Assembly: GCA_002269645.1 (NCBI GenBank)
Contig: NIVC01000206.1
Coordinates: 610,803-674,802, forward strand
Reading direction: 5' to 3'
DNA: 64,000 nt
From: Macrostomum lignano
Taxonomy: Eukaryota
In this document: positions 17,156 through 64,000 of the stretch, piece after piece
How positions within the stretch are numbered: position 1 is the stretch's first letter
Layout of the letters: the number at the start of each line of letters is the position of its first letter
Program-made: the position numbers and the translations under genes
The notes under the pieces: model-generated
What the model saw: only the letters and a program-made list of their open reading frames with translations
The model's database searches: none
What the model was told of the DNA's origin: nothing

Positions 17156-17182
17156 GATCGATCTATCTACCTATCTATCTAC

Positions 17183-17219
<37 letters not shown>

Positions 17220-17220
17220 G

Positions 17221-17305
<85 letters not shown>

Positions 17306-23029: not shown

Positions 23030-23385
23030 TCTCCCTTCTCAAATCTTCACTCTCCCTTCTCCCCTCCCCCTCTCACCTCTCTCCTCTCCCTTCCTTCTCC
23101 CCAGTTATTTTCTCTCTTGTCCCCTCACACTTCTCCCATCTCCCCTCTCTCTTCTCCCTTCTCTCCTCTCACTTCTCTTCTCTTCCCTCTCCCTTTTCCT
23201 CTCTCCCTTCTCCCATCTCCCCTCTCTCTTCTCCCTTCTCTCCTCTCACTTCTCTTCTCTTCCCTCTCCCTTCTCCTCTCTCCCTTCTCCCATCTCCCCT
23301 CTCCCTTCTCACCTCCCTCTTCTTCCCTCCCCCTTCTCCCCACTTCTATCTCTCTCATCTCCACCCTCTCTCCCCGTCTCCTCCA
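23030..23385. repeat. CT-rich low-complexity tract
   Basis: Almost pure pyrimidine. Confidence 0.9.
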
Positions 23386-23557
23386 ATCCATAATCAGCCA
23401 TAAACCAATCCAATTACACTCGCTTCAGCAAGTCCTTGATGTTTCGCATTGTGATGTTTCGTGATGTTTCGCATTGACTTGTTTTTGCCAACACTGCGCT
23501 CAGTGGTTCTCAAGTATTTTAATACTCTAAAAGCAAAAAACTTGTAACGCCTTTCAG

Positions 23558-24446
23558 GAGCGGCCAGTGAGAGTTCGGCTGCTGGCTTTTCGAACCGGCA
23601 CTCGCCAGTGATGTACAGTTCGGCTAGTAGGGCTGCTTCGGTTGCTGGGGGAAGCTCGGTGCACCATTCGCCAGGTGAGCATCTGTTACTCTTTGAAAAC
23701 TTTACCCACTAAGCTTCACCTATCAAGCAGAACCTTCACCAAAACCAGAACCTCCACCAAAATCAGAACCTACACCAAAATCAGAACCTTCACCAAAACC
23801 GGAACCTTCACCAAAACCGGAACCTTCACCAAAACTAGAACCTACACCAAAATCAGAACCTACACCAAAATCAGAACCTTCACCAAAATCAGAACCTTCA
23901 CCAAAACCGGAACCTTCACCAAAACCGGAACCTTCACCAAAACCGGAACCTTCACCAAAACCGGAACCTTCACCAAAATCAGAACCTTCACCAAAACCGG
24001 AACCTTCACCAAAATCAGAACCTTCACCAAAACCGGAACCTTCACCAAAACTAGAACCTACACCAAAATCAGAACCTACACCAAAATCAGAACCTTCACC
24101 AAAATCAGAACCTTCACCAAAACCGGAACCTTCACCAAAACTAGAACCTACACCAAAATCAGAACCTACACCAAAACTGGAACCTTCACCAAAACGGAAA
24201 CCTTCACCAAAATCAGAACCAAAACCGGAACCTTCACCAAAACCGGAACCTTCACCAAAATCAGAACCTTCACCAAAAACACAACCTTCACCAAAACCGG
24301 AACCTTCACCAAAACCGGAACCTTCACCAAAACCGGAACCTTCACCAAAACTGGAACCTTCACCAAAATCAGAACCTTCACCAAAACCGGAACCTTCACC
24401 AAAATCAGAACCTTCACCAAAACCGGAACCTTCACCAAAACCAGAA
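23558..24446 (+). CDS. Two exons, the second encoding a ~39x (PSPKPE/PSPKSE/PTPKSE) hexapeptide repeat
   Basis: Exon 23558-23674 (phase 1/1), 56-nt intron gtgagc...ctaag...caagcag, then a phase-1 exon from 23731 whose 18-bp repeat is stop-free in the PSPKPE frame (not the frame shown in the ORF track). Confidence 0.55.
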
Positions 24447-24917
24447 GATCTGCACTCAGACCTTTTAAGTGAAGCATTGCCTTTATCTGTCTATCTGTGC
24501 GCCAGAGTAACCAACCGTATTGGCTAAAAAAGAGAGATAGGGGAAGAGAGCAAGAGCAGCGCCAAGTCCGAGCGAGGAACACAACTTGTGCTCATCTAGT
24601 CCAGAGTGCAGTGGTGAGTCCTGCCTCCCTGATGAAGATGGCACTCTCTAGCGGTGCGTGTCCTGTCCAATCCTGTGGAGGGTAGAGCTGTCGGAGGGTA
24701 GGGATAGGGAGCTGGGGCTGACAGGTAGGAAGAGGGGATGCCGTGAGGACTGAAGGGAAGAGAGAAGTGTCCATCCTGTTCCTCCCTGAGTTCACAGCTC
24801 GCACGATTCTCTCAACCTAAAATTCATCAGCCGATCCAAGTCGAAATTCGAAAACAAAAAGCAGGTCAATGCCGACTAAATTACTGCTACTAGAAGAAGA
24901 TTCTCTAGAGAACAAAC

Positions 24918-33900: not shown

Positions 33901-35078
33901 TCCCTAATTCCTAGAATCGAATCCCCAATTCCAAGAATCGAATCCCCAATTCCTAGAATCCATTCGCCAATTCCTAGAATCGAATCCCCAATTCCTAGAA
34001 TCGATTCGCCAATTTCTAGAATCGAATCCCCAATTCCTAGAATTGAATTCATCCCCAATTCCTAGAATCGAATCCCCAATTCCTAGAATCGAATCCCAAA
34101 TCCTAGAATCGAATCCCCAATTCCAAGAATCGAATCCCCAATTCCTAGAATCCATTCGCCAATTCCTAGAATCGAATCCCCAATTCCTAGAATCGAATCG
34201 CCAATTTCTAGAATTGAATTCATCCCCAATTCCTAGAATCGAATCCCCAATTCCTAGAATTGAATTCATCCCCAATTCCTAGAATCGAATCCCCAATTCC
34301 TAGAATCGAATCCCAAATCCTAGAATCGAATCGCCAATTCCTAGAATCGAATCCCCAATTCCAAGAATCGAATCCCCAATTCCTAGAATCCATTCGCCAA
34401 TTCCTAGAATCGAATCCCCAATTCCTAGAATCGATTTGCCAATTTCTAGAATCGAATCCCCAATTCCTAGAATTGAATTCATCCCCAATTCCTAGAATCG
34501 AATTCCCAATTCCTAGAATCGAATCCCCAATTCCTAGAATCGAATCCCCAATTCCTAGAATCGAATCCCCAATTCCTAGAATCGAATTTATCCCCGATTC
34601 CTAGAATCGAATCCCTTATTCCTAGAAACGAATCTTTAATTTCTAGAATGGAATCCACGATTCCTAGAATCGAATCCCGAATTCCTAGAATTGAAAGTAA
34701 CCCTAGAAACGAATGTAGTTTTCTTAGAAATGAAATGGAATTCCTGGAAATTCAAAACTATCTTCCAAAATCGTAATTCGAATTCTCAGACGCAACTAAT
34801 CGAAAGCCCCGATCTCCCATCCCATCCCGTTATCAAAGGCCCGCTATTATCACCAGTACCTGCACCAGGGCTCAGCCAAGCCCAACCTTGAAGCGGAGCG
34901 CTGGAAAGGTCGCTACGCGGCTCTCAAAGAAATGCTCGAACAGCGACTATCAAGCGACGAGGCCCGATCGGTGTTCAATGAGAATTTCTCCGGAGCCGAG
35001 ACGCTGCTTTCGGTTGCCAGACACAATCTCGAACCAGCCTCATCTCCGGCTGAAAGCGCGTACACCGTGCACTTTTGA
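24918..35078 (+). CDS. Centrosomin/myomegalin-like coiled-coil protein B with complete CM2 domain
   Basis: Coiled-coil exons 24918-25370, 25984-26412, 26998-27306, 28495-28746, ~29353-29488, 29838-30111, 30602-30898, 32187-32509 (AVCRLDDFELLRKE...LLNKFWICELP) and 34790-35078 (...ETLLSVARHNLEP, cf. myomegalin LRKARGNLE). In-frame TGA at 24990 and unresolved phase breaks. Confidence 0.6.
25435..25700. repeat. Degenerate GGGATTCA(T/G)TT repeat
   Basis: ~11-bp units. Confidence 0.8.
27358..28320. repeat. 20-bp minisatellite (~48 copies)
   Basis: CCTGTGATATGTTAGACACA units. Confidence 0.95.
31300..31845. repeat. 21-bp minisatellite (~26 copies)
   Basis: GCCTGCGGCGCTAAAATGAGT units. Confidence 0.95.
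32540..34690. repeat. 21-bp minisatellite (~100 copies)
   Basis: AATTCCTAGAATCGAATCCCC units. Confidence 0.95.
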
Positions 35079-44479: not shown

Positions 44480-45075
44480 TCTAATACTAATCAAACCCGA
44501 GCAGCACGAGGCAAGACATTATCGTGATGGTGAATCTGACTTCTCTAAGCCACCCGCCATCCGAGGACGCCAACCCAACCAGTTTGAGACCGCCAGATGT
44601 TGGAGGAGGGAATGAGCGACTGATCGTTCGGCAACAAACTTGATGCTAGCGTTAAGCAAAGTTACGGCAGCCAAAGGTTAGTCAATTTTAAAACCGCTTT
44701 TACACATCTCGCCAGATAAGGGAAGGAGAGAGAGGCGAGGGTTGTTACGTCGACAAAGCAGACTAGCTTTAAAAGTGCACAGTGCCGTTCAGGATTGACT
44801 TTATGACTCGAAATTTTACACGCTTGTGTCGGAATAGCTAGAGATTGTTTGTGTCAAATTTTAGTAGGGTTGGTAAAAGTGGAGCGCCGCTATGGAGGAT
44901 TAAGTAAAAAATCCCGCTTTCTTTGCAGCAACTTTGCACTTTAAGGTGGGAATACTGGGAAGACGCTCTCCGTAGTGAGGTTAGGGTGGGTGCAAAACGG
45001 TGTCATTTGGTTGAGCGGTTTGAGAGTCCATGGCGAACAAAATTGGCCACAGACACAGTTTACAGATTTAAGGTA
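44480..45075 (+). mobile_element. Possible non-autonomous Helitron/Helentron-like insertion in a host-gene intron
   Basis: GC-richer island in an AT-rich intron; ends resemble rolling-circle elements (ctaatactaat...aaacccgagcagcacg; ttggttgagcggtttgagag...acagacacag). Confidence 0.3.
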
Positions 45076-45155
45076 TAAATGATGATAGAATATTGACACC
45101 TCTTGTCTGATATTTACTAAGTAAATGCGGAGTTTATTAGCTCTATCTGATCAAG
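45074..45155 (+). ncRNA. SNORD44: Dual-guide C/D snoRNA: U44-like (18S Am166) + snR48-like (yeast 25S G2791 equivalent), copy a
   Basis: C 45079; TGACACCTCTTGT + CTGA (45107); TATTAGCTCTAT + CTGA (45147). Confidence 0.88.
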
Positions 45156-45328
45156 TATTAAGCTCTTTTGTCCTAATAGAAATCGTTAAGAATCGATGCA
45201 AGTTTTCATATTCACTTATTTCATTTTAGAGGACGCTAAAATCCAGCTGGAAAATTGTAAGCCTTCTTAACAGTGCTTCAGGTCAGTTAGCAATGCTTAA
45301 GTATTTTTCCCCATCCTTATTTTACTTT

Positions 45329-45412
45329 TTACAATGATGAATTAATTATAGCATAGTTCATATGAACTGTACCCAGTGTACGGCATGTACAGAATTTTCA
45401 AGCCTGATATTT
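45329..45412 (+). ncRNA. SNORD77: C/D snoRNA U77-like (28S Am1521 equivalent)
   Basis: C 45334; GCATAGTTCA (45351-45360) + T + ATGA; D 45404-45407. Confidence 0.85.
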
Positions 45413-45592
45413 TATCTACCTATTAGCTACCTATTAGTTGTACCTATTTGATAAAACTACATCTTTTTTACAAGTCAGATATTTTTTTAATTTCTTTCCA
45501 GTTTGCCGCGTCAATGAAGTTTCACTGCTACATCCATCCAAGGTAATTTTTATTGCTCAGCTCTATTTAAATATATAACATATCTATAAATG

Positions 45593-45663
45593 CAGTGGCG
45601 GATCCGGGATTTTTTCCGTGAGGTCAGCCGACCCCCTTGATCCCCCTTCTGGATCCGATAGTG
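45593..45663. mobile_element. Degenerate 71-bp hAT-type MITE
   Basis: CAGTGGCGGATCC...GGATCCGATAGTG; flanks tataaatg / tatagata (6/8 TSD match). Confidence 0.55.
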
Positions 45664-45667
45664 TATA

Positions 45668-45743
45668 GATAAGTGATGAAAATAACACATCCGTGTTTGA
45701 TTTGGTCATGATATATAATTTCCATGCATCACCATCTGATTTG
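45668..45743 (+). ncRNA. SNORD33: C/D snoRNA U33-like, copy b
   Basis: GTGATGA 45673; CATGCATCACCAT + CTGA 45736. Confidence 0.85.
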
Positions 45744-45911
45744 CTTTTTTATTGGTATTAATAAAAAAATATGTGCTTTTAAAAAACTCGTCTCTACTGT
45801 AGCCATATTTTCACTTGCCCATTTTAGTGCATTTTTCCCTGGTTGGATATCAAGTCAAGTGTTAACTTGCAAAGTCAGGTAGGCTTGCACTCTTGAACTT
45901 GTGTTTTTGTT

Positions 45912-46079
45912 AGTTGCGACTTTCTCGTTTCAATCACCGACACGCAAAAAATATCTTATTGGTGACTGATTCATTTAGTCGCTAGATTACACTGACAACC
46001 GCATAAAATCCAGAAGCAGAGTAGAGATCTTTTGTTTATCTCCCAAAGTGTCTGCTTTTGATGAGCGCGGATTACATTA
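45912..46079 (+). ncRNA. Candidate box H/ACA snoRNA
   Basis: Hairpin 1 (gcgact/agtcgc; tcaccga/ttggtga), H box AGATTA 45984-45989, hairpin 2 (aaccgc/gcggatt; cagaagcaga/tctgcttttg), ACA at 46074 followed by 3 nt. Confidence 0.45.
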
Positions 46080-46143
46080 CTATTAATAGTAGTATTTAAC
46101 AAAACCGCCCTTTTATAATGGCAGAAATGGCACGCAATGTTAT

Positions 46144-46222
46144 AAATAATGATGATAACCCATAATTCTTCACTTTGAACTGAACAAAAACCAACTGATG
46201 TTAGCACTGGGTTCTGAACTAT
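46144..46222 (+). ncRNA. SNORD37: Dual-guide C/D snoRNA: U37-like (28S Am3697) + SNORD88/snR76-like (28S Cm3680), copy a
   Basis: C 46149; ATTCTTCACTTTGA + A + CTGA (46180); AGCACTGGGTT + CTGA (46214). Confidence 0.9.
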
Positions 46223-46262
46223 CATAATCATGGCTGCCACCTATATTTGTTTAGATTCTTGT

Positions 46263-46350
46263 TAATTATGATGAAATTTTAATTTCCACAGTTCAATCGT
46301 CCGATAATGCTTGATTAGATGCGGACTATTATTAGCTCTACCTGATGATT
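46263..46350 (+). ncRNA. SNORD44: U44-like C/D snoRNA, copy b (D' guide replaced)
   Basis: C 46268; D' CCGA 46301 preceded by CAGTTCAATCGT; TATTAGCTCTAC + CTGA 46342. Confidence 0.85.
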
Positions 46351-46511
46351 AAACAGTTGTTTTGTTATTTAAGTGAGTTTTTGCATCTTTAATTGCAATT
46401 TTCATGTTATTTTTTATTTCAGATGTCTTCTACCGACCAATGTCATCTCGGGGCTTTGAGGGGTAAGGCGTCTTTTTTATCTACTATTAGTAGTATAATT
46501 TTCACTTTCTA

Positions 46512-46617
46512 TTTACATGATGATCTCTATTGATTAGTCTTTCTGAGCTTTATAATTAGTTAATAAACATTTTAACCAATTACAAAACTGCTGACTAACG
46601 CCCCTATCTGATGTGAA
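46512..46617 (+). ncRNA. SNORD80: U80/snR60-like C/D snoRNA (28S Gm1612 equivalent), copy a
   Basis: C 46517; GATTAGTCTTT + CTGA (46543); CGCCCCTAT + CTGA (46608). Confidence 0.85.
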
Positions 46618-46817
46618 TCAGAAAGTGTTAGTTGAAACTTTCATATGGTATTGAAGTATTTCATAAGACACCCGTCTTAAGAAATTCATCCATTCTTTGT
46701 TTTAACACTGTTTTAGAATCCGATTCGTTTTTATGGCAAAATGGCACTGGTTCAACAAGTCTACAGAGCCAACAGGTGAGTTAATAGCCAGAATTATTTT
46801 TATCCGTCCTATGCTGG

Positions 46818-46901
46818 CTGTTATGATGATATTGATCACCTTTGGCTTTTGATAGGTTTCTTTAAATGAAAATTATCTACCATGCATCACCATCTGAGAA
46901 A
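46818..46901 (+). ncRNA. SNORD33: C/D snoRNA U33-like, copy c
   Basis: C 46823; CATGCATCACCAT + CTGA 46894. Confidence 0.85.
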
Positions 46902-47075
46902 TTTTTCTAACATTAACCAAAATCTGAGCCAATGCCAACTCCTTATGTGTCCAGAAATTCTACAGAAATTCTCCATCTCTACTCTGCATTCCAGTTGGCC
47001 CGGTCAAATTTCAAACAAGAGTTAACAGGTAAAACTGACATTGTTTTAGTTTCTAACATCCCATATACAATTCAG

Positions 47076-47162
47076 CATCCATTAATGATGATTTCATTTT
47101 ACACCGTCATGCTGTTTGATTTCAATAATGAAATTTAACCATATTGGCAGCTGAGATGGATG
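47076..47162 (+). ncRNA. C/D snoRNA, TACACCGTCATGCTGT family, copy d
   Basis: C 47085, D 47151, stem catcca/tggatg. Confidence 0.85.
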
Positions 47163-47361
47163 CTCTACGGTGTACATTTGGTCTTATAGCATATTTAAGA
47201 AAATTATACTCGTAGATAGCTAATTTGACTGCGTGTGTTCTAAGACGAATTTCTCTAAGTTTCTTCTTATCGTGTAACTTATAAATGGATAGTTTTGAGC
47301 AAACAAGCTGGCAATGGTGTAATAATCTTATCTATCAGATAGAATACACGCTTGGCTATTT

Positions 47362-47443
47362 TTATCATGACGATCCAGCAATTTAGTATCAACCTTATCA
47401 GTGTATTGGATACAATATAAAGCACTACAGCGCTCTGTCGTCT
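47362..47443 (+). ncRNA. SNORD48: U48-like snoRNA, copy b, degenerate boxes (possible pseudo-snoRNA)
   Basis: CACTACAGCGCT guide retained, but C = ATGACGA (47367) and D = CTGT (47435). Confidence 0.5.
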
Positions 47444-47642
47444 AGATAAAGCTGGTATTTTAGCTCCTATTCGAGGCCTAAGTGTTTTGCTTAACGTATC
47501 TTCCTTATTTTATGTTGGTGCCTCCCTAAAATCCTCAGATTATGTGACGCACCTGATGCTGCATGATTCAGTTTACTTGTAAGTGACTGCCAATATGCTC
47601 GTAATATAATTAAATAAATCTATAATTTGTATACCAGAAACT

Positions 47643-47730
47643 AATTAGTGATGAATAATTCCTTACCTACTATGATAATGTTTTAGAAAACTCCAGTTGT
47701 GATTAAAAAATATCCCTAATCTGACTTTAT
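47643..47730 (+). ncRNA. C/D snoRNA to 28S GUAGGUAAGG, copy b
   Basis: GTGATGA 47648; TTCCTTACCTACT + ATGA; D 47721 (U50-like guide diverged to TATCCCTAAT). Confidence 0.75.
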
Positions 47731-47902
47731 TACTAATTATAGTATTTTACGCTACTATCTTAGGCATTTTTTTCAATTACTTTAAGTAGTCACTTTCCTC
47801 TCAAAATTTTAGTACATATTCTTGCTTGGCTGGCTAGTGCTGCAACTAATTTAGCAAGGTAAGATCAGTAGGACCTTCTGTAGAGGCTTATGTTATATTA
47901 AG

Positions 47903-47980
47903 AATCCGTGATGATAACTCAGAATTCTTCACTTTGACCTGATTATTGACAATGTGATGATAGCACTGGGTTCTGAATTG
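47903..47980 (+). ncRNA. SNORD37: Dual-guide U37 + SNORD88-like snoRNA, copy b
   Basis: GTGATGA 47908; D' CTGA 47939; C' GTGATGA; AGCACTGGGTT + CTGA 47973. Confidence 0.9.
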
Positions 47981-48033
47981 TTTTTAATATAACTAGCCTC
48001 TAGTTTTTTTAAATCAGATTGCTTTTTTAATTA

Positions 48034-48118
48034 GCTACATGATGACAAAAACAATTTGACACCTCTTGTCCGATGTAAATAACATAAATGCGGACTGTTA
48101 TTAGATATACCTGAGAAA
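48034..48118 (+). ncRNA. U44/snR48-type snoRNA, copy c (18S guide decayed)
   Basis: C 48039; TGACACCTCTTGT + CCGA 48070; D guide TATTAGATATAC (2 changes) + CTGA 48111. Confidence 0.85.
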
Positions 48119-48303
48119 TCATTTCTAGGACTCTAGTAAAATGCGCAAATAATAAGCTACTATTGTTTAAGTCAATCAATTAAATCTTTTCAGCAGCGAA
48201 TGCGGCTGATTGCTTCAAAATATGTCGAATTCAATTTTTTTCGCAGGTAAGCGTCTCTTATCAGTTGTTTGATTCTGAACTCTTAAGCAAGCTACTCTAC
48301 CAC

Positions 48304-48378
48304 ATGTAATGATGATTTATATGGATTAGTCTTTCTTAGTTCTCAAATGTGCAGACAAGCGCCCCTATCTGACTACTG
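48304..48378 (+). ncRNA. SNORD80: U80-like snoRNA, copy b
   Basis: C 48309; GATTAGTCTTT + CTTA; CGCCCCTAT + CTGA 48369. Confidence 0.85.
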
Positions 48379-48557
48379 TCAATTATAACTATGCAAATTA
48401 GCTCATTTAAGTAGTGTGCCAGACCTTTTATTGTCTGATTGTTAATTTACCATTTTATTTTTGCAGGAGTTCAATCAACTCCAGTTTGTGCGTTAAGATC
48501 TGCAGCTTTGAGGTGAGACAATGCTATTTCTAACCCAATAAATCAGGAGTTCACGTT

Positions 48558-48649
48558 GTAAAATGATGAGACATTTTTTGATCAACCATATGAGTCAATG
48601 TAGCTATTGGCTAAATGAATTGCGTTTTTTAAACTTCTCTCTGATTTAT
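48558..48649 (+). ncRNA. SNORD7: mgU6-47-like snoRNA with extra 18S 5'-end guide, copy a
   Basis: C 48563; GATCAACCA + T + ATGA (48590); TTAAACTTCTCT + CTGA (48641), one mismatch to U6. Confidence 0.75.
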
Positions 48650-48682
48650 TGCCCCTTTCCAATATCCTACTAACCAGCTGTA

Positions 48683-48770
48683 CATCAATGATGAGACATT
48701 TCCTGGATCAACCATATGAGCCTGACTATTGTTAGGTCTATGAATGGTTTCTAATCTTCTCTCTGAATGA
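48683..48770 (+). ncRNA. SNORD7: mgU6-47-like snoRNA with extra 18S 5'-end guide, copy b
   Basis: C 48688; GGATCAACCA + T + ATGA (48716); CTAATCTTCTCT + CTGA (48763), 12/12 to U6 AGAGAAGAUUAG, fifth nt pairs with A47. Confidence 0.88.
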
Positions 48771-49319
48771 TAGCAAATATCTACTAGGTCTGTTACTACA
48801 GGATTAAGCTGGGTAACTTTTAAGCGTCACTTGCTTCTCTTTACATTTCAGAGCCTCGAAATTGCTTCTGGAGATTTCCTTTTTTATATTATCCGGCTCT
48901 ACAAAACAATTGTGATAGACATTTTATTTGATTTGATTTGATTAAAGTCAAATTTTGACAGCAAATTGTAACTAATTTCTGTTATAATATATTTATTTAC
49001 TGAGCCTATACGCTTGCTAACAAACGGTCTTTCTCTGTTTTCGCTGTTTCATGCATTTAAAGAGTTTATTAAATACAAATACGTAATATGATCTTGAAAT
49101 CATGATATTCGTGATTTGATTACACCCTGAGAACATTCTGTCACTTTCAATAAATTTAAGGCATATTAGGATAGAGGATAGAAAAATGCAAGGCCCGTAA
49201 CAGAAACTAAATATGTACAGAACGTGAAGGATTGTGCAGTTCTGAAAGCTAGTGTGTGAGGGAGCTGTAGTCGGGTAGTAGGTAGTAAGGGTGGAAAATG
49301 TAGGTTAGTAGTCATACAT

Positions 49320-49471
49320 GCGCAACCTTGGGAATCACTCGGCCGTTTCTATTGGCAACACATGTAAGTCGCTATTGGCTGAGAGCAGTCGCGTGACTAC
49401 TATTCCGTCCAATAGCGGCTTACATGTGTGTGTTGCCAATAGAAACGGCCGGGTGAATCCCTAGGTTGCGC
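49320..49471. repeat. ~60-bp-arm inverted repeat (hairpin, MITE-like)
   Basis: 49320-49378 is the reverse complement of 49409-49471; ~30-nt loop; no clear TSD. Confidence 0.8.
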
Positions 49472-49750: not shown

Positions 49751-50299
49751 ATGTTTCGCAAATTCGACGACAAAGAGAACATCTCGTCCGTAAACAACGC
49801 CAAGAACAGTGTCCAGAAGGGTATCAGAAACACCATCCTGACGCAGTATCCGGGATGCGCAGATTACGTTGACCAGATTCTACCCAAGAAGGAAACGCTC
49901 AGCGTTGTCAAATGCCACGAGCACATCGAGCTGTACGCCAACCCGGCTGGCGAGGTGCTGTTCTTCAGGCAGCGCGACTCGCCGCTGTATCCCAGCTTGA
50001 AACTGCTGCACAGATATCCGTTCATGCTGCCGCACATGCAGGCGGACAAGGGCGCTATCAAATTCCTGCTGAACGGGTCCAATGTGATGTGCCCGGGCCT
50101 GACCACGCCTGGCGGCCGGCTGTCCCAGGTGCCAGCTAGCACAGTTGTTGCCGTCATGGCCGAAGGCAAACAGCACGCGTTAGCAATCGGCTTGACGGCG
50201 ATGAGCGCGGACGAGATTGCCAGCAAGAACAAAGGAGTTGGCATCGAGACTGTGCACTGTTTAAATGACGGCCTGTGGCGGCTGCGTTCTGTCAAGTAG
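49751..50299 (+). CDS. MCTS1: Malignant T-cell-amplified sequence 1 (MCT-1/Tma20; PUA-domain ribosome recycling/reinitiation factor)
   Basis: 182-aa intronless ORF: MFRKFDDKEN...VKCHEHIEL...DKGAIKFLLNGSNVMCPGLT...GKQHALAIG...HCLNDGLW. Confidence 0.97.
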   Translation: MFRKFDDKENISSVNNAKNSVQKGIRNTILTQYPGCADYVDQILPKKETLSVVKCHEHIELYANPAGEVLFFRQRDSPLYPSLKLLHRYPFMLPHMQADKGAIKFLLNGSNVMCPGLTTPGGRLSQVPASTVVAVMAEGKQHALAIGLTAMSADEIASKNKGVGIETVHCLNDGLWRLRSVK

Positions 50300-53396: not shown

Positions 53397-54323
53397 ATGA
53401 GTTCCAGCATCTTAACTGGACTGACTGCGGCGATGCTGCTGCCACTCCTGGTGCACTGCGGCAATGGAACCATGCACAGCAGCATCTCGCTCGGCGGCTG
53501 CGTGGTGCCGCAGACTCCGCAGCACTCGCTGGCGGCCTCGAGCGCCCGCATGTGCGCCTTCCTGTGCTCTCAGCTCCGTCGTCCTTGCATCGCCTGGAGC
53601 CACCGCGCAGGCGTCTGCAACATGTCGGACAGCCTCCAGACCGCCAGTCTGACGAACGACACCGACTGCCAGGCGTGGAGCGCCCTGCGCCAGCTCGGCC
53701 TCGTCGCCTTCTGGCCCATGAGCAACGTCACTCGGACTCGCAATGCGGTCTCGAACAGCGGCCATCTCGACCTGCAGGAGAACATCCCGATGCAGTACAC
53801 GGACAGCGCCGTCAACTTCACTGGTCAGTCGGGTGTGTCAGAGCGGTTCAACATTGACGAGCTGACTTCGGTGTGTCTCACCAGCCTCACCATGTCAGTG
53901 TGGGTCAAGGTCACCAACCCAGCGAGAGGTTCGATGCCTCTGCTGGAGGGCCTCACAATGCCTTCTTCATACCACACTCGGTTTTGGCTTCATCCTACAA
54001 CTACCGACATCGAGTTCACCGTTGCATTCAAGGTCCGAGTGTCCGGACCCACCGACACGGCCAGCGGTTGGACCCACATCGCCGCGGTGTACGACAAGCA
54101 GACACCGGAAGTCAGGATCCTCGTCAACGGAACTCGACAGGCCACCAGCGGCTCGGCCACCGCTTTGACCTCGTGCGCGGACTTCGGCAGCAGCGTGCAG
54201 ATCGGAGCCGTCAGCCGCAATGCCGATCACAAACGCGTGTTCCAAGGCTTCATGAGATGCTTCGGAGTGTCAGAGAGAGCTCTGAGCGACTCTGAAATTG
54301 CCGCTTTGATCCAGCTGTGCTAA
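53397..54323 (+). CDS. Secreted PAN/Apple + LamG/pentraxin-like lectin, copy 2
   Basis: 308-aa intronless ORF, near-identical to copy 1 except the signal peptide and one central segment. Confidence 0.85.
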   Translation: MSSSILTGLTAAMLLPLLVHCGNGTMHSSISLGGCVVPQTPQHSLAASSARMCAFLCSQLRRPCIAWSHRAGVCNMSDSLQTASLTNDTDCQAWSALRQLGLVAFWPMSNVTRTRNAVSNSGHLDLQENIPMQYTDSAVNFTGQSGVSERFNIDELTSVCLTSLTMSVWVKVTNPARGSMPLLEGLTMPSSYHTRFWLHPTTTDIEFTVAFKVRVSGPTDTASGWTHIAAVYDKQTPEVRILVNGTRQATSGSATALTSCADFGSSVQIGAVSRNADHKRVFQGFMRCFGVSERALSDSEIAALIQLC

Positions 54324-56439: not shown

Positions 56440-56771
56440 CTACTGAAAGTAGATCAGCTGTCATCCAAAAATATTTTTGCTTCTTAGCAACAATTTTGCC
56501 GCCATGCATCATCCATGACCTTAGAAAAAGTATACGAGCCATGTGTTCTCAATCCATCCATTATAGTTTAAGTAGAAAAAAAATCCCGCACAACTTGCAC
56601 AACTTGCATGTTCAGTGATTTCATGAAAAATTTCGTACATCAATTTACCAGAACTGGACACAAGAGTGGAGCATGGTTAATGGAGTTCTGCATGTTGACA
56701 GCCAGCCAAGATAAATTTGCTGACTAAAATCTCAGTCTCACTTTGGGTCTTCGATTTTTGTTTGGATTGCG

Positions 56772-57345
56772 ATGCTTCTGCTTCTGCCGCTGCTTCTCGG
56801 CCTGCTTTTCTGCATCGGTGCGAACGCCGAGCTGCACAGCACTCGCTGGCGGCCTCGAGCGCCCGCATGTGCGCCTTCCTGTGCTCTCAGCTCCGTCGTC
56901 CCTGCATCGCCTGGAGCCACCGCGCAGGCGTCTGCAACATGTCGGACAGCCTCCAGACCGCCAGTCTGACGAACGACACCGACTGCCAGTCGTGGAGCGC
57001 CCTGCGCCAGCGCGGTCTCGTCGCCTTCTGGCCCATGAGCAACGCCACTCGGACTCGCAATGCGGTCTCGAACAGCGGCCATCTCGACCTGCAGGAGAAC
57101 ATCCCGATGCAGTACACGGACAGCGCCGTCAACTTCACTGGTCAGTCGGGTGTGTCAGAGCGGTTCAACATTGACCAGCTGACTTCGGTGTGTCTCGACA
57201 GTCTCACCATGTCAGTGTGGGTCAAGGTCACCAATGCGTCAAGGGGTTCGATGCCTCTGCTGGAGGGCCTCACAATGCCTTCTTCATACCACACTCGATT
57301 GTGCTTCGTCCTTCAACTGCCGACATCATGTTCGCCCGAATGCAT
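56772..57345 (+). pseudogene. PAN + LamG lectin, copy 3 (pseudogene)
   Basis: 43-nt frameshifting deletion at CAGCA microhomology after ELHS, 1-nt deletion near 57303, C-terminal third missing. Confidence 0.8.
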
Positions 57346-57961
57346 ATCACTTTTATATTGTTTTAAGCAGTCGTCTTCAGAACCAAGCATACATCTACAT
57401 GTACATCACTAGAACTATAACGCCTTTATGTACACGTCTATGTTTTGGCTTCGTCTGTCTGCCCATTTCCAGATATGATTATCTATCTGCTTCTAAAAAG
57501 ACATTTAGACGCGATCGTACGCCCGAGAAGGGCTCATGACGTTGAAAGTTAAAAATTTAGTAGTGTAGCATAAAATCACTATATATTTTTTAGTTTTATT
57601 CGTCAGACCCTACTTACAGAAAGCAATGAGAATTTAATAAAATCGCAATCAATTATTTTATGCTTGGATTTGGAGCATAGCATTCAACTATTAGGTAGTA
57701 TTCTATAATATTAATCAGAAGCATCAATACGACAGCTCCCTCAAACAGGATAAAAACCGACACCGTACAAACGCAAGCGGTCCCTTTTGAGTACAAAATT
57801 CTTTTTCGCCTCAGTTTACACGTCTCAAAGCAATTTGAGACTTTAATGACTAACAATATATGCACGAATAACAGTGACACTCGTCAGACTGACAGATGGC
57901 ATGCACCTCTCCAACAGGTGACCCTCATCTGTCTGGCTTGAGCTAAACATCCATCTGTCCA

Positions 57962-58156
<195 letters not shown>

Positions 58157-58202
58157 GGTGTCTGTCTGTCTGTCTGTCTGTCTTAGTGTCTGTCTGTCTG
58201 TG

Positions 58203-58235
<33 letters not shown>

Positions 58236-58238
58236 TGG

Positions 58239-58316
<78 letters not shown>

Positions 58317-59099
58317 GATTCCCACCCGAATCCCACACCCCAATCGACCCCGAATTCCATTTTTGCAAAGCTACGCTTCTCTTTGTCTCGCTTTCCCGTT
58401 TTCTCGCTTCCTCCAACCCCTCTCTACCCTCTTTTCGCGCTCTATCCCTCTCGCCTTTTCCAAGAGGGGGCCGTTGCGATGGCAACCTGGGGGATGAGAT
58501 TGCGGTGGGGGGGGGGGTTGGCCACCCGCCGCGGCCGTACTGCAGCATTGTTGTATTAACGTTGAGCCCTAAATGAAACAAAAAACCCAAAGCCCCAAAA
58601 GCCAGTTTGCTGTGCAGGCGCAGGAGTAGCAAGAGACGGTCTAGAAGAGCCTGCATGATTGGGTTGATGGGACAGAGAGCTTAGGAGATGTGGCAGCGGA
58701 TGTCCCATGCACACACAGAGGCGGTGACTGCAGTCAAATAGTGGAAGAGTTTGAGGCATGAACGGATGCTTTGCGTCATTCAGAAATATTTTAATTATAG
58801 ATATGATTTTTAGTATATGGAAGGAAGAATTGTTTTTTATGAACACTAATTGACTGGCGTTTGATTGACGTCAAAAATAATAGTCTGCCAGCTATATCAG
58901 TCTGACAGCAGGTTCTCCATTATCTTGTGCTTTGACTTTTTAAACTCTGCAACAGTTATTGTCAAGAGGCTTGGTTAGAGCATTGTTGCAAGGTAAGCTT
59001 ATCCATATATTATTCTTATGCATTTTTTGCTGTTTGTTTGTAAATCAAGTTCTATTGTGGTACAGGGCTCACAGGAGTTTTTCCTATATACCTTCTGCA

Positions 59100-59595
59100 A
59101 CGGAGAATATGGACAGTGTTGTCTATGGCAGCGGGGAATATGGACAGTGTTGTCTATGGCAGCGGGGAATATGGACAGTGTTGTCTATGGCAGCGGTGAA
59201 TATGGACAGTGTTGTCTATGGCAGCGGGGAATATGGACAGTGTTGTCCATGGCAACGGGTAATATGGACAGTGTTGTCTATGGCAACGGGTAATATGGAC
59301 AGTGTTGTCTATGGTAACGGGGAATATGGACAGTGTTGTCTATGGCAGCGGGGAATATGGACAGTGTTGTCCATGGCAACGGGTAATATGGACAGTGTTG
59401 TCTATGGCAACGGGAAATATGGACAGTGTTGTCTATGGCAACTAAGGGAATATGGACAGTGTTGTCCATGGCAACGAAGGGAATATGGACAGTGTTGTCT
59501 ATGGCAACGAAGGGAATATGGACAGTGTTGTCTATGGCAACTAAGGGAATATGGACAGTGTTGGCCATGGCAACTAAGGGAATATGGACAGTGTT
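59100..59595. repeat. 31-32-bp minisatellite
   Basis: GGAATATGGACAGTGTTGTCTATGGCA... units. Confidence 0.9.
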
Positions 59596-59662
59596 TTCTA
59601 CGGCCAGTTGACCATTTCATCTGCCGAGGCCAACATAATATTTTCAGCACCCTCAGCTGAAA

Positions 59663-60948
<1,286 letters not shown>

Positions 60949-60999
60949 GTGCTGTCTTGCTAAGGGAATTTCTAAGAAGATTAAGGGGAGATCCGTGTG

Positions 61000-63900
61000 A
61001 GGGGAGATTTTTGGAGGGCGGAGAGACTAGAGGAGGGGAGACTCTGAGAGGGGAGACTCGAAGAGGGGAGACTCGGGAGGAGGAGATTCGGGAGGGGAGA
61101 CTCAGGGAGGGGAGACTGGGAGGAGAGACTCGGAAGAGGGGAGACTCGGGAGGAGGAGATTCGGGGAGGGGAGACTCAGGGAGGGGAGACTCGGGGAGGG
61201 GAGACTCGGAAGAGGGGAGACTCGGGAGGAGGAGATTCGTGAGGTGGAGATTCGGGGAGGGGAGACTCGGGAGGAGGAGATTCGTGAGGTGGAGATTCGG
61301 GGAGGGGAGACTCGGAAGAGGGTGAGACTCGGGGAGGGGAGACTCGGAGGAGGGGAGACTCGGGGGGGAGGAGAGACTCGGGGAGGGAGACTCGGGAGGG
61401 AGACTCGGGAAGGGGAGAATCGGGGAGGGAGAATCGGGGAGGAGAGACTTGAGGAGGGGAGACTCGGGGAGGGGAGACTCGGGGAGGGGAGACTCGGGAG
61501 GAGGAGATTCGGGGAGGGGAGACTCGGAGGAGGGAGACTCGGAGGAGAGGAGACTCGGGAGGGGAGACTCGGAGGAGGGGAGACTCGGGGAGTGAGACTC
61601 GGGAGGGGAGACTTGGAGGAGGGGAGACTCGGAGGAGGGGAGACTCGAGGAGGGGAGACTCGGAGGAGGGGAGACTCGGAGGAGGGGAGACTCGGGGAGG
61701 GGAGAATCGGGAGGGGAGAATCGGGGAGGAGAGACTTGAGGAGGGGAGACTCAGGGAGGGGAGACTCGGGGGGAGGAGAGACTCGGGAGGGGAGACTCGG
61801 GGAGGGGAGACTTGGAGGAGGGAGACTCGGAGGAGGGGAGACTCGAGGAGGGGAGACTCGGAGGAGGGGAGACTCGGGGAGGGGAGAATCGGGGAGGAGA
61901 GACTTGAGGAGGGGAGACTCGGGGAGGGGAGACTCGGGAGGGGAGACTCGGAGGAGGGGAGACTTGGAGGAGGGGAGACTCGGGGAGGGGAGAATCGGGG
62001 AGGGGAGAATCGGGGAGGAGAGACTTGAGGAGGGGAGACTCGGGGAGGGGAGACTCGGGGAGGGGAGACTCGGGAGGAGGAGATTCGGGGAGGGGAGACT
62101 CGGAGGAGGGGAGACTCGGAGGAGAGGAGACTCGGGGAGGGGAGACTCGGAGGAGGGGAGACTCGGAGGAGAGGAGACTCGGGGAGGGGAGACTTGGAGG
62201 AGGGAGACTCGGAGGAGGGGAGACTCGAGGAGGGAGACTCGGAGGAGGGGAGACTCGGAGGAGGGGAGACTCGGGGAGGGGAGAATCGGGGAGGGGAGAA
62301 TCGGGGAGGAGAGACTTGAGGAGGGGAGACTCGGGAGGGGAGACTCGGGGGGAGGAGAGACTCGGGAGGGGAGACTCGGGGAGGGGAGACTTGGAGGAGG
62401 GGAGACTCGGAGGAGGGGAGACTCGGGGAGGGGAGACTCGGAGGAGGGAGACTCGGGGAGGGGAGAATCGGGGAGGGAGAATCGGGGGGAGAGACTTGAG
62501 GAGGGGAGACTCGGGGAGGGGAGACTCGGGGAGGGGAGACTCGGAGGAGGGGGAGACTTGGAGGAGGGGAGACTCGGAGGAGGGGAGACTCGAGGAGGGG
62601 AGACTCGAGAGGGGAGACTCGGAGGAGGGGAGACTCGAGGAGGGGAGACTCGGAGGAGGGGAGACTCGGGGAGGGGAGAATCGGGGAGGGGAGAATCGGG
62701 GAGGAGAGACTTGAGGAGGGGAGACTCGGGGAGGGGAGACTCGGGGAGGGGAGACTCGGAGGAGGGAGACTTGGAGGAGGGGAGACTCGGAGGAGGGGAG
62801 ACTCGAGGAGGGGAGACTCGAGGAGGGGAGACTTGGAGGAGGGGAGACTCGGAGGAGGGGAGACTCGAGGAGGGAGACTCGGAGGAGGGGAGACTCGGAG
62901 GAGGGGAGACTCGGGGAGGGGAGAATCGGGGAGGGAGAATCGGGGAGGAGAGACTTGAGGAGGGGAGACTCGGGGAGGGGAGACTCGGGGGGGAGGAGAG
63001 ACTCGGGGAGAGGAGACGGGGAGGGGAGACTTGGAGGAGGGGAGACTCGGAGAGGGGAGACTCGAGGAGGGGAGACTCGGAGGAGGGGAGACTCGGGAGA
63101 GGGGAGACTCGGGGGGGGAGACTCGCGGGAGGAGAGACTTGAGGAGGGGAGACTCGGGGAGGGGAGACCGGGAGAGGGGAGACTCGGAGGAGGGGAGACT
63201 TGGAGGAGGGGAGACTCGGAGGAGGGGAGACTCGAGAGGGGAGACTCGAGGAGGGGAGACTTGGAGGAGGGGAGACTCGGAGGAGGGGAGACTCGAGGAG
63301 GGGAGACTCGGAGGAGGGGAGACTCGGAGGAGGGGAGACTCGGGGAGGGAGAATCGGGGAGGGGAGAATCGGGGAGGAGAGACTTGAGGAGGGAGACTCG
63401 GGGAGGGGAGACTCGGGGGGGAGGGAGAGACTCGGGGAGGGGAGACTCGGGGAGGGAGGACTTGGAGGAGGGGAGACTCGGAGGAGGGGAGACTCGAGGA
63501 GGGGAGACTCGGAGGAGGGGAGACTTGGAGGAGGGAGAGACTCGGAGGAGGGGAGACTCGAGGAGGGGAGACTCGAGGAGGGGAGACTCGGAGGAGGGGA
63601 GACTCGAGGAGGGGAGACTCGAGGAGGGAGACTCGCGGACGAGGGAGGACTCGAAGAGGGGAGACTCGGGAGGAGGAGATTCGGGAGGGGAGACTCGAGG
63701 AGGGGGAGATCGGAGGGGAGACTCGGAAGGGGAGAATCGGAGGAGGGGAGACTCGAGGAGGGAAGACTTGGAGGAGGGAGACTCGGAGGAGGGGAGACTC
63801 TGGGAGGGGAGACTCTGGGAGGGGAGACTCGGGGAGGGGAGACTCGGGGAGGGGAGACTCGGAGGAGGGGAGACCCGGGGAGGGAGACTCGGGGGGGAGA
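61000..63900. repeat. Purine-rich ~15-bp satellite (intronic)
   Basis: GGGGAGACTCGG(A/G)GAG units. Confidence 0.95.
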
Positions 63901-64000
63901 TCGTGGAGGGAAGATTTGAGGGGAGACTCGGGCACGAATGTTTTAGAGTCAGGGAGGAGAGATTTGAGGGGAGATTCTTGGGAAGAAGATATTGAGAGAA

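What the first reader, a model, noticed from the sequence alone, without database searches (positions are those of the whole stretch)
48558..48770. Tandem mgU6-47 homologues carry a second guide aimed at 18S U8
Seen: both copies have a U6 A47 guide at box D (12/12 in copy b) and conserve (G)GATCAACCA-T-ATGA at box D'. Established: this is complementary to 18S UGGUUGAUCC, and the +5 rule points at U8, in the 5' helix/central-pseudoknot region that U3 chaperones. I do not recall Um8 in human or yeast 18S, nor this element in human SNORD7. Inference: one snoRNA links spliceosomal U6 methylation to SSU 5'-end modification or folding.
Basis: partly seen in the sequence, partly recalled or inferred. 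Interest (0 to 1): 0.78.

Follow-up and report, generated by a model that had tools for sequence, protein, structure and literature searches.

The report
Flatworm snoRNA guiding U6 and 18S
Two tandem intronic box C/D snoRNA genes of a flatworm carry the classic guide for methylating U6 snRNA at A47. They also carry a second, conserved guide matching bases 5-14 of 18S rRNA and aimed at U8; the same guide, in the same register, occurs in a ciliate snoRNA and many archaeal sRNAs, so the target is probably real but remains unproven.

Summary
At 48558-48649 (copy a) and 48683-48771 (copy b, + strand) lie two box C/D snoRNA genes in one intron of a multi-snoRNA host gene. The assembly is one I know as Macrostomum lignano.

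- **Copy b** is intact in all three haplotypes or homeologues I could fetch. It has box C, GGATCAACCA-T-ATGA (D' guide and box), an internal hairpin, a C'-like box, a 12/12 U6 guide placing A47 at +5, and box D.
- **Copy a** is decaying. Its U6 guide is degenerate, its D' guide is 9 nt in this window, and box C is destroyed in one homeologue.

The D' guide is a perfect 10-bp complement of 18S nt 5-14, with U8 at +5. It is as conserved between a and b as the boxes, while the spacers have diverged.

The same UGGAUCAACCA + 1 nt + D' arrangement occurs in Tetrahymena TtnuCD24 (Rfam) and in an environmental eukaryote's tandem snoRNA cluster. The archaeal version (GGAUCAACCGG) occurs in at least 36 archaeal loci.

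Linking U6 and rRNA guides on one snoRNA is already known (mgU6-77, Neurospora CD11). What is new is the target, which lies in the 18S 5'-end and central-pseudoknot region.

Not tested: the species' own 18S and U6 sequences, expression, methylation, and orthologues.

The parts
48683..48771 (+). Copy b: the intact box C/D snoRNA (mgU6-47-type double guide), including a short terminal stem AUCA/UGAU
   Evidence: Boxes and both guides are identical in all three haplotypes. Box D ends 85 nt upstream of the intron's 3' splice site (cag|ag at 48851/48852).
48688..48694 (+). Copy b box C, ATGATGA
48705..48714 (+). Copy b D' guide GGATCAACCA, a perfect complement of 18S nt 14-5. The A at 48714-4 (fifth nt upstream of D') lies opposite U8.
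   Evidence: 18S 5' end; -17.2 kcal/mol. Invariant in the window, L001/L002 and L007.
48716..48719 (+). Copy b D' box, ATGA (non-consensus; the consensus is CUGA)
   Evidence: It is separated from the guide by one unpaired nt (T 48715), the same spacing as in TtnuCD24 and L005.
48720..48737 (+). Copy b internal hairpin between D' and C' (GCCUGAC-UAUU-GUUAGGU)
   Evidence: A hairpin of different sequence sits at the same place in copy a. The A-to-G change at 48734 in L007 keeps pairing as a U-G wobble.
48740..48745 (+). Copy b C'-like box, ATGAAT (only the UGA core is retained)
   Evidence: identical in copy a
48751..48762 (+). Copy b D guide CTAATCTTCTCT, 12/12 complement of U6 nt 43-54, with A47 at +5
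   Evidence: unique in the window; -19.6 kcal/mol. It matches the snoZ30 consensus UAAUCUUCUCU-CUGA.
48763..48766 (+). Copy b box D, CTGA
48558..48649 (+). Copy a: a decaying paralogue. Parts: box C 48563-48569; D' guide GATCAACCA 48580-48588; D' ATGA 48590-48593; hairpin 48593-48612; C' 48615-48620; degenerate U6 guide 48629-48640; box D 48641-48644.
   Evidence: The U6 guide differs and is imperfect in every haplotype (-10.8 and -11.2 kcal/mol). Box C is ATAATAA in L007. Box D lies 207 nt from the 3' splice site.
48514..48851 (+). Host intron containing both copies (gtgagac ... tttcag)
   Evidence: Splice signals read; inference, with no RNA data.
44900..49090 (+). Apparently non-coding multi-snoRNA host gene with about 13 intronic C/D snoRNAs. 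It ends at an ATTAAA signal upstream of the intronless MCTS1 gene.
   Evidence: Sub-threshold Rfam hits: SNORD37 (38.2 and 30.1 bits), snR55/Z10 (35.6), Z102/R77, SNORD18, SNORD33, SNORD12.

Best explanation
Copy b is a canonical intron-encoded double-guide box C/D snoRNA. Copy a probably once was too.

The guide upstream of box D pairs with U6 snRNA nt 43-54 and directs fibrillarin to 2'-O-methylate A47, the last A of ACAGAGA. That is the SNORD7/mgU6-47/Z30 function.

The guide upstream of the D' box pairs with nt 5-14 of 18S rRNA, which covers the 5' strand of helix 1 and the 5' strand of the central pseudoknot. It places U8 at the methylation position. The pairing must occur on nascent pre-rRNA, either before U3 box A occupies the overlapping site or after U3 is released.

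The two functions share one RNA by the ordinary modularity of C/D guides, not because they are mechanistically coupled.

Shown: the architecture, both complementarities and their register, conservation among paralogues and haplotypes, and recurrence of the same SSU guide in other lineages. Inferred: expression, that the species' 18S and U6 have the universal sequences, and that methylation actually happens.
For: 1. Full C / guide / D' / hairpin / C' / guide / D architecture is present twice, against none in shuffles.
2. The U6 guide is 12/12 with A47 at +5. It is unique in the window and matches the Rfam Z30 consensus.
3. The D' guide forms 10 perfect bp with 18S 5-14 at -17.2 kcal/mol, comparable with the U6 duplex at -19.6. 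None of 5000 shuffles does as well. The 18S 5' end is taken from published probes.
4. An internal calibration: in other duplicated snoRNAs of the same host gene, guides with recognised targets stay identical while spacers and some D' regions diverge. The a/b D' guide behaves like a conserved guide.
5. Copy b is unchanged in boxes and guides across three haplotypes, whereas copy a accumulates hits in box C and the guides. Copy b also sits 85 nt from the 3' splice site.
6. A hairpin sits between D' and C' in both copies with different sequence.
7. The identical UGGAUCAACCA + 1 nt + D' occurs in Tetrahymena TtnuCD24 and in 5 tandem snoRNA copies on an environmental contig.
8. 37 archaeal sRNA matches carry (G)GAUCAACCG(G) in an exact 12-nt guide slot in the same register. 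All 37 have the unspecified G that extends the pairing, and 33 of the 37 parse with a full second box set. One, Ignicoccus sR155, is RNA-seq verified.
Against: - D' is AUGA and C' is AUGAAU, both off consensus.
- The duplex is only 10 bp, near the lower limit for guided methylation.
- The site overlaps the U3 box A pairing region, and U3 is already tethered to the 5' ETS when the 18S 5' end emerges (established knowledge). The time window for a snoRNP there is therefore narrow.
- No Um8 is reported for any eukaryote in the searchable literature, nor, to my knowledge, in the complete yeast and human maps.
- The haplotypes differ by only about 3% locally, so their invariance has little power.
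- The a/b conservation also covers GACATTT, which has no known role, so partial gene conversion cannot be excluded.
- No orthologue from another flatworm could be obtained.
- Rfam scores are far below gathering thresholds.
Confidence: 0.55

Rival explanations
1. The D' element does pair with the 18S 5' end but acts without methylating. It would be a transient chaperone or placeholder that keeps nt 5-14 single-stranded, delaying helix 1 and the central pseudoknot or competing with U3 box A, as proposed for some archaeal double-guide sRNAs.
For: - Degenerate D' (AUGA) and C' (AUGAAU) boxes could weaken fibrillarin positioning.
- The target is exactly the segment that must be kept unfolded.
- TtnuCD24's two guides together cover 17S nt 5-14 and 15/16-23, like a clamp.
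- In 10 archaeal loci, and in N. equitans sR25, the SSU-5'-end guide is partnered with UUCAGCCUUG. Dennis et al. list 16S U857 and G884 for M. kandleri sR32, which carries that guide; I read G884 as its target. By my own knowledge that lies next to the 3' strand of the pseudoknot.
- Dennis et al. 2015 explicitly propose chaperone roles for such sRNAs.
Against: - The register relative to D' is exactly the canonical +5 in every lineage, which is not required for mere pairing.
- Archaeal versions have perfect CUGA boxes and 12-nt spacers, typical of active guides.
- The M. lignano RNA has no second 18S element in register. CUAUUG in the spacer gives only 6 bp in copy b.
Confidence: 0.15
2. The D' complementarity has no present function. 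It would be a relic or a chance match preserved because the duplication or a gene-conversion tract is recent, and only the U6 guide matters.
For: - The conserved tract also includes GACATTT, which has no assigned role.
- Boxes D' and C' are off consensus.
- Divergence among haplotypes is low.
- Many eukaryotic C/D snoRNAs have one orphan guide, as the Tetrahymena paper itself notes.
- For a 10-mer in a fixed register, the chance of hitting about 7 kb of rRNA and snRNA is about 0.7% per guide. That is not negligible across the roughly 26 guide slots in this host gene.
Against: - Flanks and the D'-C' spacer of a and b have diverged beyond alignment while the guide has not.
- Chance does not explain the same 11-mer, spacing and register recurring in a ciliate, an environmental eukaryote and 36 archaeal loci.
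- Within the same host gene, D' regions do diverge between paralogues, for example in the snR55/SNORD33-like pair.
Confidence: 0.2
3. The D' guide is functional but aimed at another RNA that contains UGGUUGAUCC, such as a site in 28S rRNA, a spacer, or another small RNA of this species.
For: No M. lignano rRNA or snRNA set could be scanned here, so alternative targets are not excluded.
Against: The archaeal counterpart changes CCA to CCGG exactly as the SSU 5' end changes from CUGG to CCGG. That co-variation points to the SSU 5' end as the shared target.
Confidence: 0.05

Closest known systems
SNORD7 / mgU6-47 / Z30 (Rfam RF00288; S. pombe form snoZ30a RF01196)
   Same: An intronic box C/D snoRNA whose box-D guide (..UAAUCUUCUCU-CUGA) pairs with the U6 ACAGAGA-AGAUUAG region and places A47 at +5.
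   Different: The vertebrate consensus has another D' guide, GUGAAGUAuaGu-CUGA, and no 18S 5'-end complementarity. Scores are 21.5 and 18.5 bits against a gathering score of 50.
Multi-target U6/rRNA guides: Neurospora crassa CD11 (U6-Am47 + 18S-Am793 + 26S-Am356) and human mgU6-77/SNORD10
   Same: One C/D snoRNA serves both U6 and rRNA (mgU6-77 is named, and its 28S target is my own knowledge).
   Different: The rRNA targets are internal sites, not the 18S 5' terminus. In CD11 the U6 guide is assigned to D'.
Tetrahymena thermophila TtnuCD24 (Rfam RF02300; Andersen & Nielsen 2011, PMC3273799)
   Same: It has the identical 11-mer UGGAUCAACCA, one unpaired nt, then D', with U8 at +5. It is the best-scoring snoRNA family hit over the first 60 nt of both copies (22.8 and 20.6 bits).
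   Different: TtnuCD24 is 58 nt, has no U6 guide, and its D guide (CUACUGGC) also pairs with the SSU 5' end (nt 16-23). The scores are far below its gathering score of 75. Its published target table is in a supplement I could not read.
Archaeal C/D sRNAs with an SSU 5'-end guide (Thermococcus sR14-type, Rfam RF01145; Ignicoccus hospitalis sR155; about 36 loci found here)
   Same: The same target segment and the same register: (G)GAUCAACCG(G) followed directly by CUGA, with the A opposite U8 at position 5.
   Different: These are archaeal 12-nt guides matching CCGGUUGAUCC, are free-standing genes, and have other partner guides. Iho sR155 is listed with no predicted target in Dennis et al. 2015.
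U3 snoRNA box A/A' pairing with the 18S 5' end
   Same: It pairs with an overlapping stretch of the 18S 5' end and thereby blocks premature central-pseudoknot formation (established knowledge).
   Different: U3 is not a methylation guide. It has boxes A/A'/B/C and 5'-ETS hinges, and nothing of that kind is present here (no U3 hit).

Membership tests
SNORD7 / mgU6-47 / Z30 | Box C (RUGAUGA) and box D (CUGA) with a short terminal stem | tested here: met
   Both copies in the window. Copy a's box C is mutated to ATAATAA in homeologue L007.
SNORD7 / mgU6-47 / Z30 | A guide of at least 10 nt directly upstream of box D, complementary to U6, with A47 at the fifth position | tested here: met
   Copy b is 12/12 (48751-48762) at -19.6 kcal/mol. 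Copy a has only 7 contiguous bp (-10.8 kcal/mol). The U6 sequence is from my own knowledge; no U6 gene is in the window or loci.
SNORD7 / mgU6-47 / Z30 | Sequence/structure score at or above the Rfam gathering threshold (50 bits) | tested here: not met
   21.5 bits (copy a) and 18.5 bits (copy b). This is usual for snoRNAs across phyla, where only boxes and guide are kept. Membership therefore rests on guide identity only.
SNORD7 / mgU6-47 / Z30 | U6 A47 is 2'-O-methylated and depends on this RNA; nucleolar localisation | not testable with these tools
   No RNA or modification data were available.
TtnuCD24 (RF02300) | D' guide UGGAUCAACCA followed by one nt and box D' | tested here: met
   alignment. 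Copy a in this window has U instead of the first G.
TtnuCD24 (RF02300) | A second guide (CUACUGGC) upstream of box D pairing with SSU nt 16-23, in an RNA of about 58 nt | tested here: not met
   Copy b has only CUAUUG in the spacer, out of register with any D box. Copy a has CUAUUGGC, but that would put C17, not C18, at +5. The RNA continues with a U6 guide.
TtnuCD24 (RF02300) | Score at or above the gathering threshold (75 bits) | tested here: not met
   22.8 and 20.6 bits, E = 0.67 and 2.
Archaeal SSU-5'-end C/D sRNAs (sR14-type) | A 12-nt guide slot between C/C' and D'/D carrying GGAUCAACCG(G), in an archaeal genome | tested here: not met
   The window is metazoan, the spacer is 20-21 nt, and the guide ends CCA not CCGG. 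It works like them but is not a member.
U3 snoRNA | Boxes A/A', B, C, C', D and hinge complementarity to the 5' ETS | tested here: not met
   No U3 match in the Rfam scans. The architecture is a plain C/D'/C'/D guide RNA.

The most novel reading that the evidence does not exclude
A C/D guide against SSU rRNA nt 4/5-14 (U8 at +5) may be an ancient function shared by Archaea and scattered eukaryotes and lost in the yeast and vertebrate lineages.

Its primary role would be to hold the SSU 5' end unpaired until the central pseudoknot can form, a U3-like or pre-U3 chaperone step, with methylation as a by-product. In many archaea it is partnered with a guide to the helix-27 side of the pseudoknot. 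In Tetrahymena it is partnered with a second 5'-end guide.

In Macrostomum this guide has been grafted onto the U6-A47 snoRNA, which would make the flatworm a tractable animal model for it.
Probability: 0.2. Interest if true: 0.85.

Novelty: new variant of a known kind. Interest (0 to 1): 0.6.

Why it matters
If Um8, or merely the pairing, is real, it would be the first animal example of a snoRNA acting on the extreme 5' end of 18S rRNA. That is the stretch U3 must hold open and that later forms helix 1 and the central pseudoknot. It raises a concrete, testable question of how a modification snoRNP and U3 share one binding site in time.

RiboMeth-seq-type maps are, to my knowledge, usually weak for the first nucleotides of an rRNA. 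A modification there could therefore have been missed in many organisms.

The cross-domain recurrence found here suggests an overlooked, possibly ancient SSU 5'-end guide. It appears in a ciliate, an environmental eukaryote and at least 36 archaeal loci, including an RNA-seq-verified Ignicoccus sRNA published with no predicted target. That could bear on how archaea, which lack U3, chaperone pseudoknot formation.

Tried and rejected
1. **Metagenome scan for the dual guide** (TGATGA..GATCAACCA..CTTCTCTCTGA). Three hits. L003 and L004 are coding-like chance matches without a D' box. L005 matched only because a chance CTTCTCTCTGA follows one repeat; it has the 18S guide but no U6 guide.
2. **Synteny route to other flatworms.** MCTS1 lies 1 kb downstream, but the protein search returned only M. 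lignano itself at 100% identity and then molluscs and trematodes at 66% or less. With no congeners available, I did not pursue it.
3. **Viral-contig scan** for TGATGA..GGATCAACCA-NNTNA. It returned 53 hits, all phage coding sequence. This is noise.
4. **A second 18S pairing by the conserved CTATTG in the D'-C' spacer**, by analogy with TtnuCD24's D guide. It gives 8 bp in copy a but only 6 in the intact copy b, is out of register with any box, and the motif sits in different parts of the hairpin in a and b. I give it low weight.
5. **Intramolecular pairing of AACCA with TGGTT downstream of C' in copy b.** It is not conserved in L001, L007 or copy a, so I rejected it.
6. **Literature.** I found no Macrostomum snoRNA work and no '18S Um8' in any notation tried. 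The TtnuCD24 target table is in an unheld supplement, and the S. pombe mgU6-47 paper is not held.
7. **Checking an archaeal 16S in the fetched loci.** None contains a 16S gene, so the archaeal target assignment rests on the standard Arch21F-region sequence (my own knowledge).
8. **Whole-region homeologue divergence**. The figures are unreliable outside about 48200-48900 because of large indels, so I used only the local differences.

Full report
**Where the window comes from.** The intronless ORF at 49751-50299 encodes an MCTS1/Tma20 protein with Pre-PUA and PUA domains. Its exact sequence is encoded on contigs of assembly GCA_002269645.1 with NIVC01 accessions. I know that assembly as the Mlig_3_7 assembly of the flatworm Macrostomum lignano; this is my own knowledge, as the tool does not name the organism (taxonomy). 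Locus L006 (NIVC01000206.1) is identical to the window across the finding. L001 and L002 are one second haplotype or homeologue, and L007 is a third. M. lignano is known to be a hidden polyploid, so three versions of the locus are not surprising.

**The observation.** The sequence shows two box C/D units on the + strand.
- Copy a (48558-48649): ATGATGA - GACATTTTTT GATCAACCA T - ATGA - 21-nt spacer - ATGAAT - TGCGTTTTTTAAACTTCTCT - CTGA.
- Copy b (48683-48771): ATGATGA - GACATTTCCT GGATCAACCA T - ATGA - 20-nt spacer - ATGAAT - GGTTT CTAATCTTCTCT - CTGA.

A composite pattern with both guides and all boxes occurs exactly at these two places and never in 100 shuffles. The 12-mer complement of U6 AGAGAAGAUUAG occurs once in 64 kb, at 48751-48762 in copy b. 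Both copies have short terminal stems and a hairpin between D' and C' whose sequence differs between them.
- Copy a's U6 guide is degenerate.
- Copy a's D' guide is one base shorter in this window.
- The internal boxes are off consensus (AUGA and AUGAAU).

**Targets and register.** With U6 numbered as in human (my own knowledge; the U6 review lists Am47 and mgU6-47), CUAAUCUUCUCU pairs with nt 43-54, and the fifth base upstream of box D faces A47. Rfam's Z30 family is the mgU6-47 family. Its consensus ends ..UUAAUCUUCUCUCUGA and is one of only three snoRNA families hit here, although at 21.5 and 18.5 bits against a gathering score of 50.

The human 18S 5' end, read from two published antisense probes, is UACCUGGUUGAUCCUGCCAGUAG. 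GGAUCAACCA pairs perfectly with nt 14-5. One unpaired U follows, then AUGA, so the fifth base faces U8. The predicted duplex is -17.2 kcal/mol, against -19.6 for copy b with U6 and about -11 for copy a with U6. None of 5000 shuffles of the 12-mer does as well on the 18S 5' end.

I could not obtain M. lignano's own 18S or U6. The window and loci contain neither. The 5'-terminal 18S sequence is the universal eukaryotic primer site, also used for rhabditophoran flatworms, so I treat its presence as very likely but untested.

**Is the D' guide under constraint?** Between copies a and b the segment from box C through D' is about 91% identical. The D'-C' spacer is about 48% identical and the flanks do not align.

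The same host gene provides a calibration. It contains duplicated SNORD37-like, Z102/R77-like, SNORD18-like and snR55/SNORD33-like snoRNAs. In those pairs the guides with recognised targets are identical, while the spacers diverge. Some D' regions diverge too, for example in the snR55/SNORD33-like pair. The a/b D' element behaves like a retained guide.

Among the three haplotypes, copy b differs only at 48734 and at 48749-48750. The first change is in the hairpin and keeps pairing as a wobble. The second lies just 5' of the U6 guide. Copy a has lost the first G of the D' guide in this window. It carries different defects in the U6 guide in each haplotype, and in L007 its box C is ATAATAA.

Copy b's box D lies 85 nt from the intron's 3' splice site and copy a's lies 207 nt away. 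In vertebrates the productive distance is about 65-85 nt (Hirose & Steitz 2001, cited; my own knowledge). I conclude that copy b is the working gene and copy a a decaying duplicate.

Caveats: local haplotype divergence is only about 3%, and the conserved tract includes GACATTT, for which I have no role. Gene conversion therefore cannot be excluded.

**Relatives of the guide.** The best Rfam hit over the first 60 nt of both copies is Tetrahymena TtnuCD24, at 22.8 and 20.6 bits, which is not significant on its own. The printed consensus is GAUUGAUGAUACAUUUGGAUCAACCACCUGAUU.CUGAUGUUCUACUGGCGACUGAAU. It has the same UGGAUCAACCA, one unpaired base and then D'. Its D guide CUACUGGC is complementary to SSU nt 16-23 (-14.8 kcal/mol), so that RNA would clamp the first 23 nt of the SSU rRNA. 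The published target table is in a supplement I could not read.

My one metagenome scan for the dual guide found no true dual-guide relative. It did bring in contig Ga0136589_1032368 (L005), which carries five tandem copies of a 70-nt C/D snoRNA: UGCC-AAUGAUGA-GUCAAAAGCAAAUGGAUCAACCAC-CUUA-CUCUGC-UGGUGA-GAACUCUGCUG-CUGA-GGCA. This again has UGGAUCAACCA and one base before a D'-like box, and it has no U6 guide.

Because archaeal 16S begins AUUCCGGUUGAUCC (the Arch21F region; my own knowledge), I scanned the prokaryotic genome collection for TGATGA-N1-4-GATCAACCG-N-CTGA.
- 44 matches have the 2-nt spacing that makes a 12-nt archaeal guide slot, and 37 of those lie in 36 archaeal loci. The taxa include Thermococci, Desulfurococcales, Sulfolobales, Hyperthermus, Bathyarchaeia, Methanomethylicia/Culexarchaeia, thermophilic Nitrososphaeria and Aenigmatarchaeota.
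- All 37 carry the unspecified G that extends pairing to C14, and 23 carry the G that pairs with C4.
- 33 of the 37 parse with a complete second box set and partner guide. The SSU guide serves as the D guide in 23 of these and as the D' guide in 10 (a looser classification gives 25 and 11).
- The seven bacterial matches at that spacing lack the G and lie in coding-like sequence.
- The Thermococcus copy scores 52.4 bits on Rfam sR14.

Ignicoccus hospitalis sR155, an RNA-seq-verified sRNA in Dennis et al. 2015, carries GAGGGAUCAACCGG-CUGA and is listed there with no predicted target. The same supplement predicts 16S C4 and U12 methylation in Methanopyrus.

The change of the guide from ..CCA in eukaryotes to ..CCGG in archaea tracks the change of the SSU 5' end from CUGG to CCGG. 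That argues the SSU 5' end is the shared target. Whether this reflects common descent or convergence on an early-transcribed, invariant sequence cannot be decided here.

**Mechanism.** The best-supported reading is an ordinary double-guide snoRNP. The D guide directs U6 Am47, and the D' guide directs 18S Um8. The U6 part is close to certain in silico. The 18S part I put at a little over one half.

The main mechanistic difficulty is that nt 5-14 overlap the U3 box A pairing site and later form helix 1 and the pseudoknot (established knowledge). The snoRNP must therefore act in a narrow window or on a sub-population.

A pairing-only chaperone role is a serious rival. It is encouraged by TtnuCD24's double 5'-end complementarity. 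It is also encouraged by the archaeal pairing of this guide with UUCAGCCUUG in 10 loci and in N. equitans sR25. Dennis et al. list 16S U857 and G884 for Mka sR32, which carries that guide. I read G884 as its target, beside the 3' strand of the pseudoknot by my recollection of the 16S sequence. No function, or another target, remain possible.

**Comparison with the known.** U6 guides sharing a snoRNA with rRNA guides are known: Neurospora CD11 targets U6-Am47 + 18S-Am793 + 26S-Am356, and mgU6-77 is another case by my own knowledge.

What is new is the target. The vertebrate Z30 consensus lacks the element. No paper in the library mentions 18S Um8, and no Macrostomum snoRNA work exists there. 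The yeast and human maps, as I know them, start at Am28 and Am27.

I class the finding as a new variant of a known kind, with moderate-to-good interest. Most of that interest comes from the cross-domain recurrence of the guide, which needs experimental mapping of the SSU 5' end to be taken further.

Noticed in passing
window 44900-49090 (+): An apparently non-coding snoRNA host gene with about 13 intronic C/D snoRNAs, usually one per intron. It contains a duplicated block of SNORD37-like, Z102/R77-like and SNORD18-like units at 46148-46612 and again at 47907-48375. A pyrimidine-rich possible 5'TOP start lies near 44913, and an ATTAAA signal near 49070.
   Followed up: partly
L009, L011-L013, L017, L020, L022, L024, L025, L028, L031, L057, L058, L063, L065, L068, L069, L073, L074, L080, L082, L089, L091, L095, L097, L098, L101, L102, L104, L106, L107, L109, L112, L115, L122, L123: A widespread archaeal C/D sRNA guide, (G)GAUCAACCG(G), sits in an exact 12-nt slot and is complementary to 16S nt 4-14 with U8 at +5. 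Ignicoccus sR155, which carries this guide, is published with 'no predicted target' (Dennis et al. 2015 supplement).
   Followed up: partly
L020, L058, L073, L097, L101, L102, L106, L112, L115, L123; N. equitans sR25 in the PMC4644070 supplement: In Bathyarchaeia, Methanomethylicia/Culexarchaeia and a Thermoprotei MAG, the 16S-5'-end guide is partnered on the same sRNA with UUCAGCCUUG. The same pair occurs in swapped positions in Nanoarchaeum. The second guide seems to target helix 27 next to the central pseudoknot's 3' strand, a possible U3-like clamp. The 16S position rests on Mka sR32 (16S U857 and G884 listed; I read G884 as this guide's target) and on my memory of the 16S sequence.
   Followed up: partly
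L005 1-1472 (metagenome contig Ga0136589_1032368): Five tandem copies, plus degenerate ones, of a 70-nt C/D snoRNA from an unidentified, presumably eukaryotic organism. Each has UGGAUCAACCA-C-CUUA as D' guide and box and GAACUCUGCUG as D guide. Copy 3 has lost box D (CTGT).
   Followed up: partly
Rfam RF02300 consensus as printed: Both guides of Tetrahymena TtnuCD24 are complementary to the first 23 nt of SSU rRNA (nt 5-14 and 15/16-23), predicting U8 and C18 as targets. I could not check whether the authors reported this.
   Followed up: partly
window 48570-48576 and 48695-48701: GACATTT directly after box C is identical in copies a and b, and ACAUUU is also present in TtnuCD24. No role is known. 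GACAU could pair with the conserved 18S AUGUC near nt 53-57, but that is only 5 bp.
   Followed up: no
window 49328-49463: A long, near-perfect inverted repeat between the host gene and MCTS1. It gives spurious sub-threshold hits to miRNA and HIV stem-loop models (34 bits against a gathering score of 57) and looks like a MITE-type element.
   Followed up: no
window 20345-21265 (-), 53397-54323 (+), 56717-57412 (+): Three paralogous ORFs of about 300 aa with a signal-peptide-like N-terminus and a Laminin_G_3 / concanavalin-A-like domain (Pfam E = 4e-16 for the second). The third looks truncated.
   Followed up: partly
window 19836-19905 (-): Rfam calls a tRNA just above threshold (34.6 bits) with a broken T-arm, while ARAGORN finds no tRNA in the window. 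It is probably a tRNA pseudogene or a tRNA-derived repeat.
   Followed up: partly
window 3600-8700, 15600-17300, 21400-24500, 31100-34300, 58100-64000: Very abundant micro- and minisatellite arrays, which generate long artefactual ORFs in several frames. GC content and GC skew jump sharply in the last 4 kb (GC 0.64, skew +0.53).
   Followed up: no
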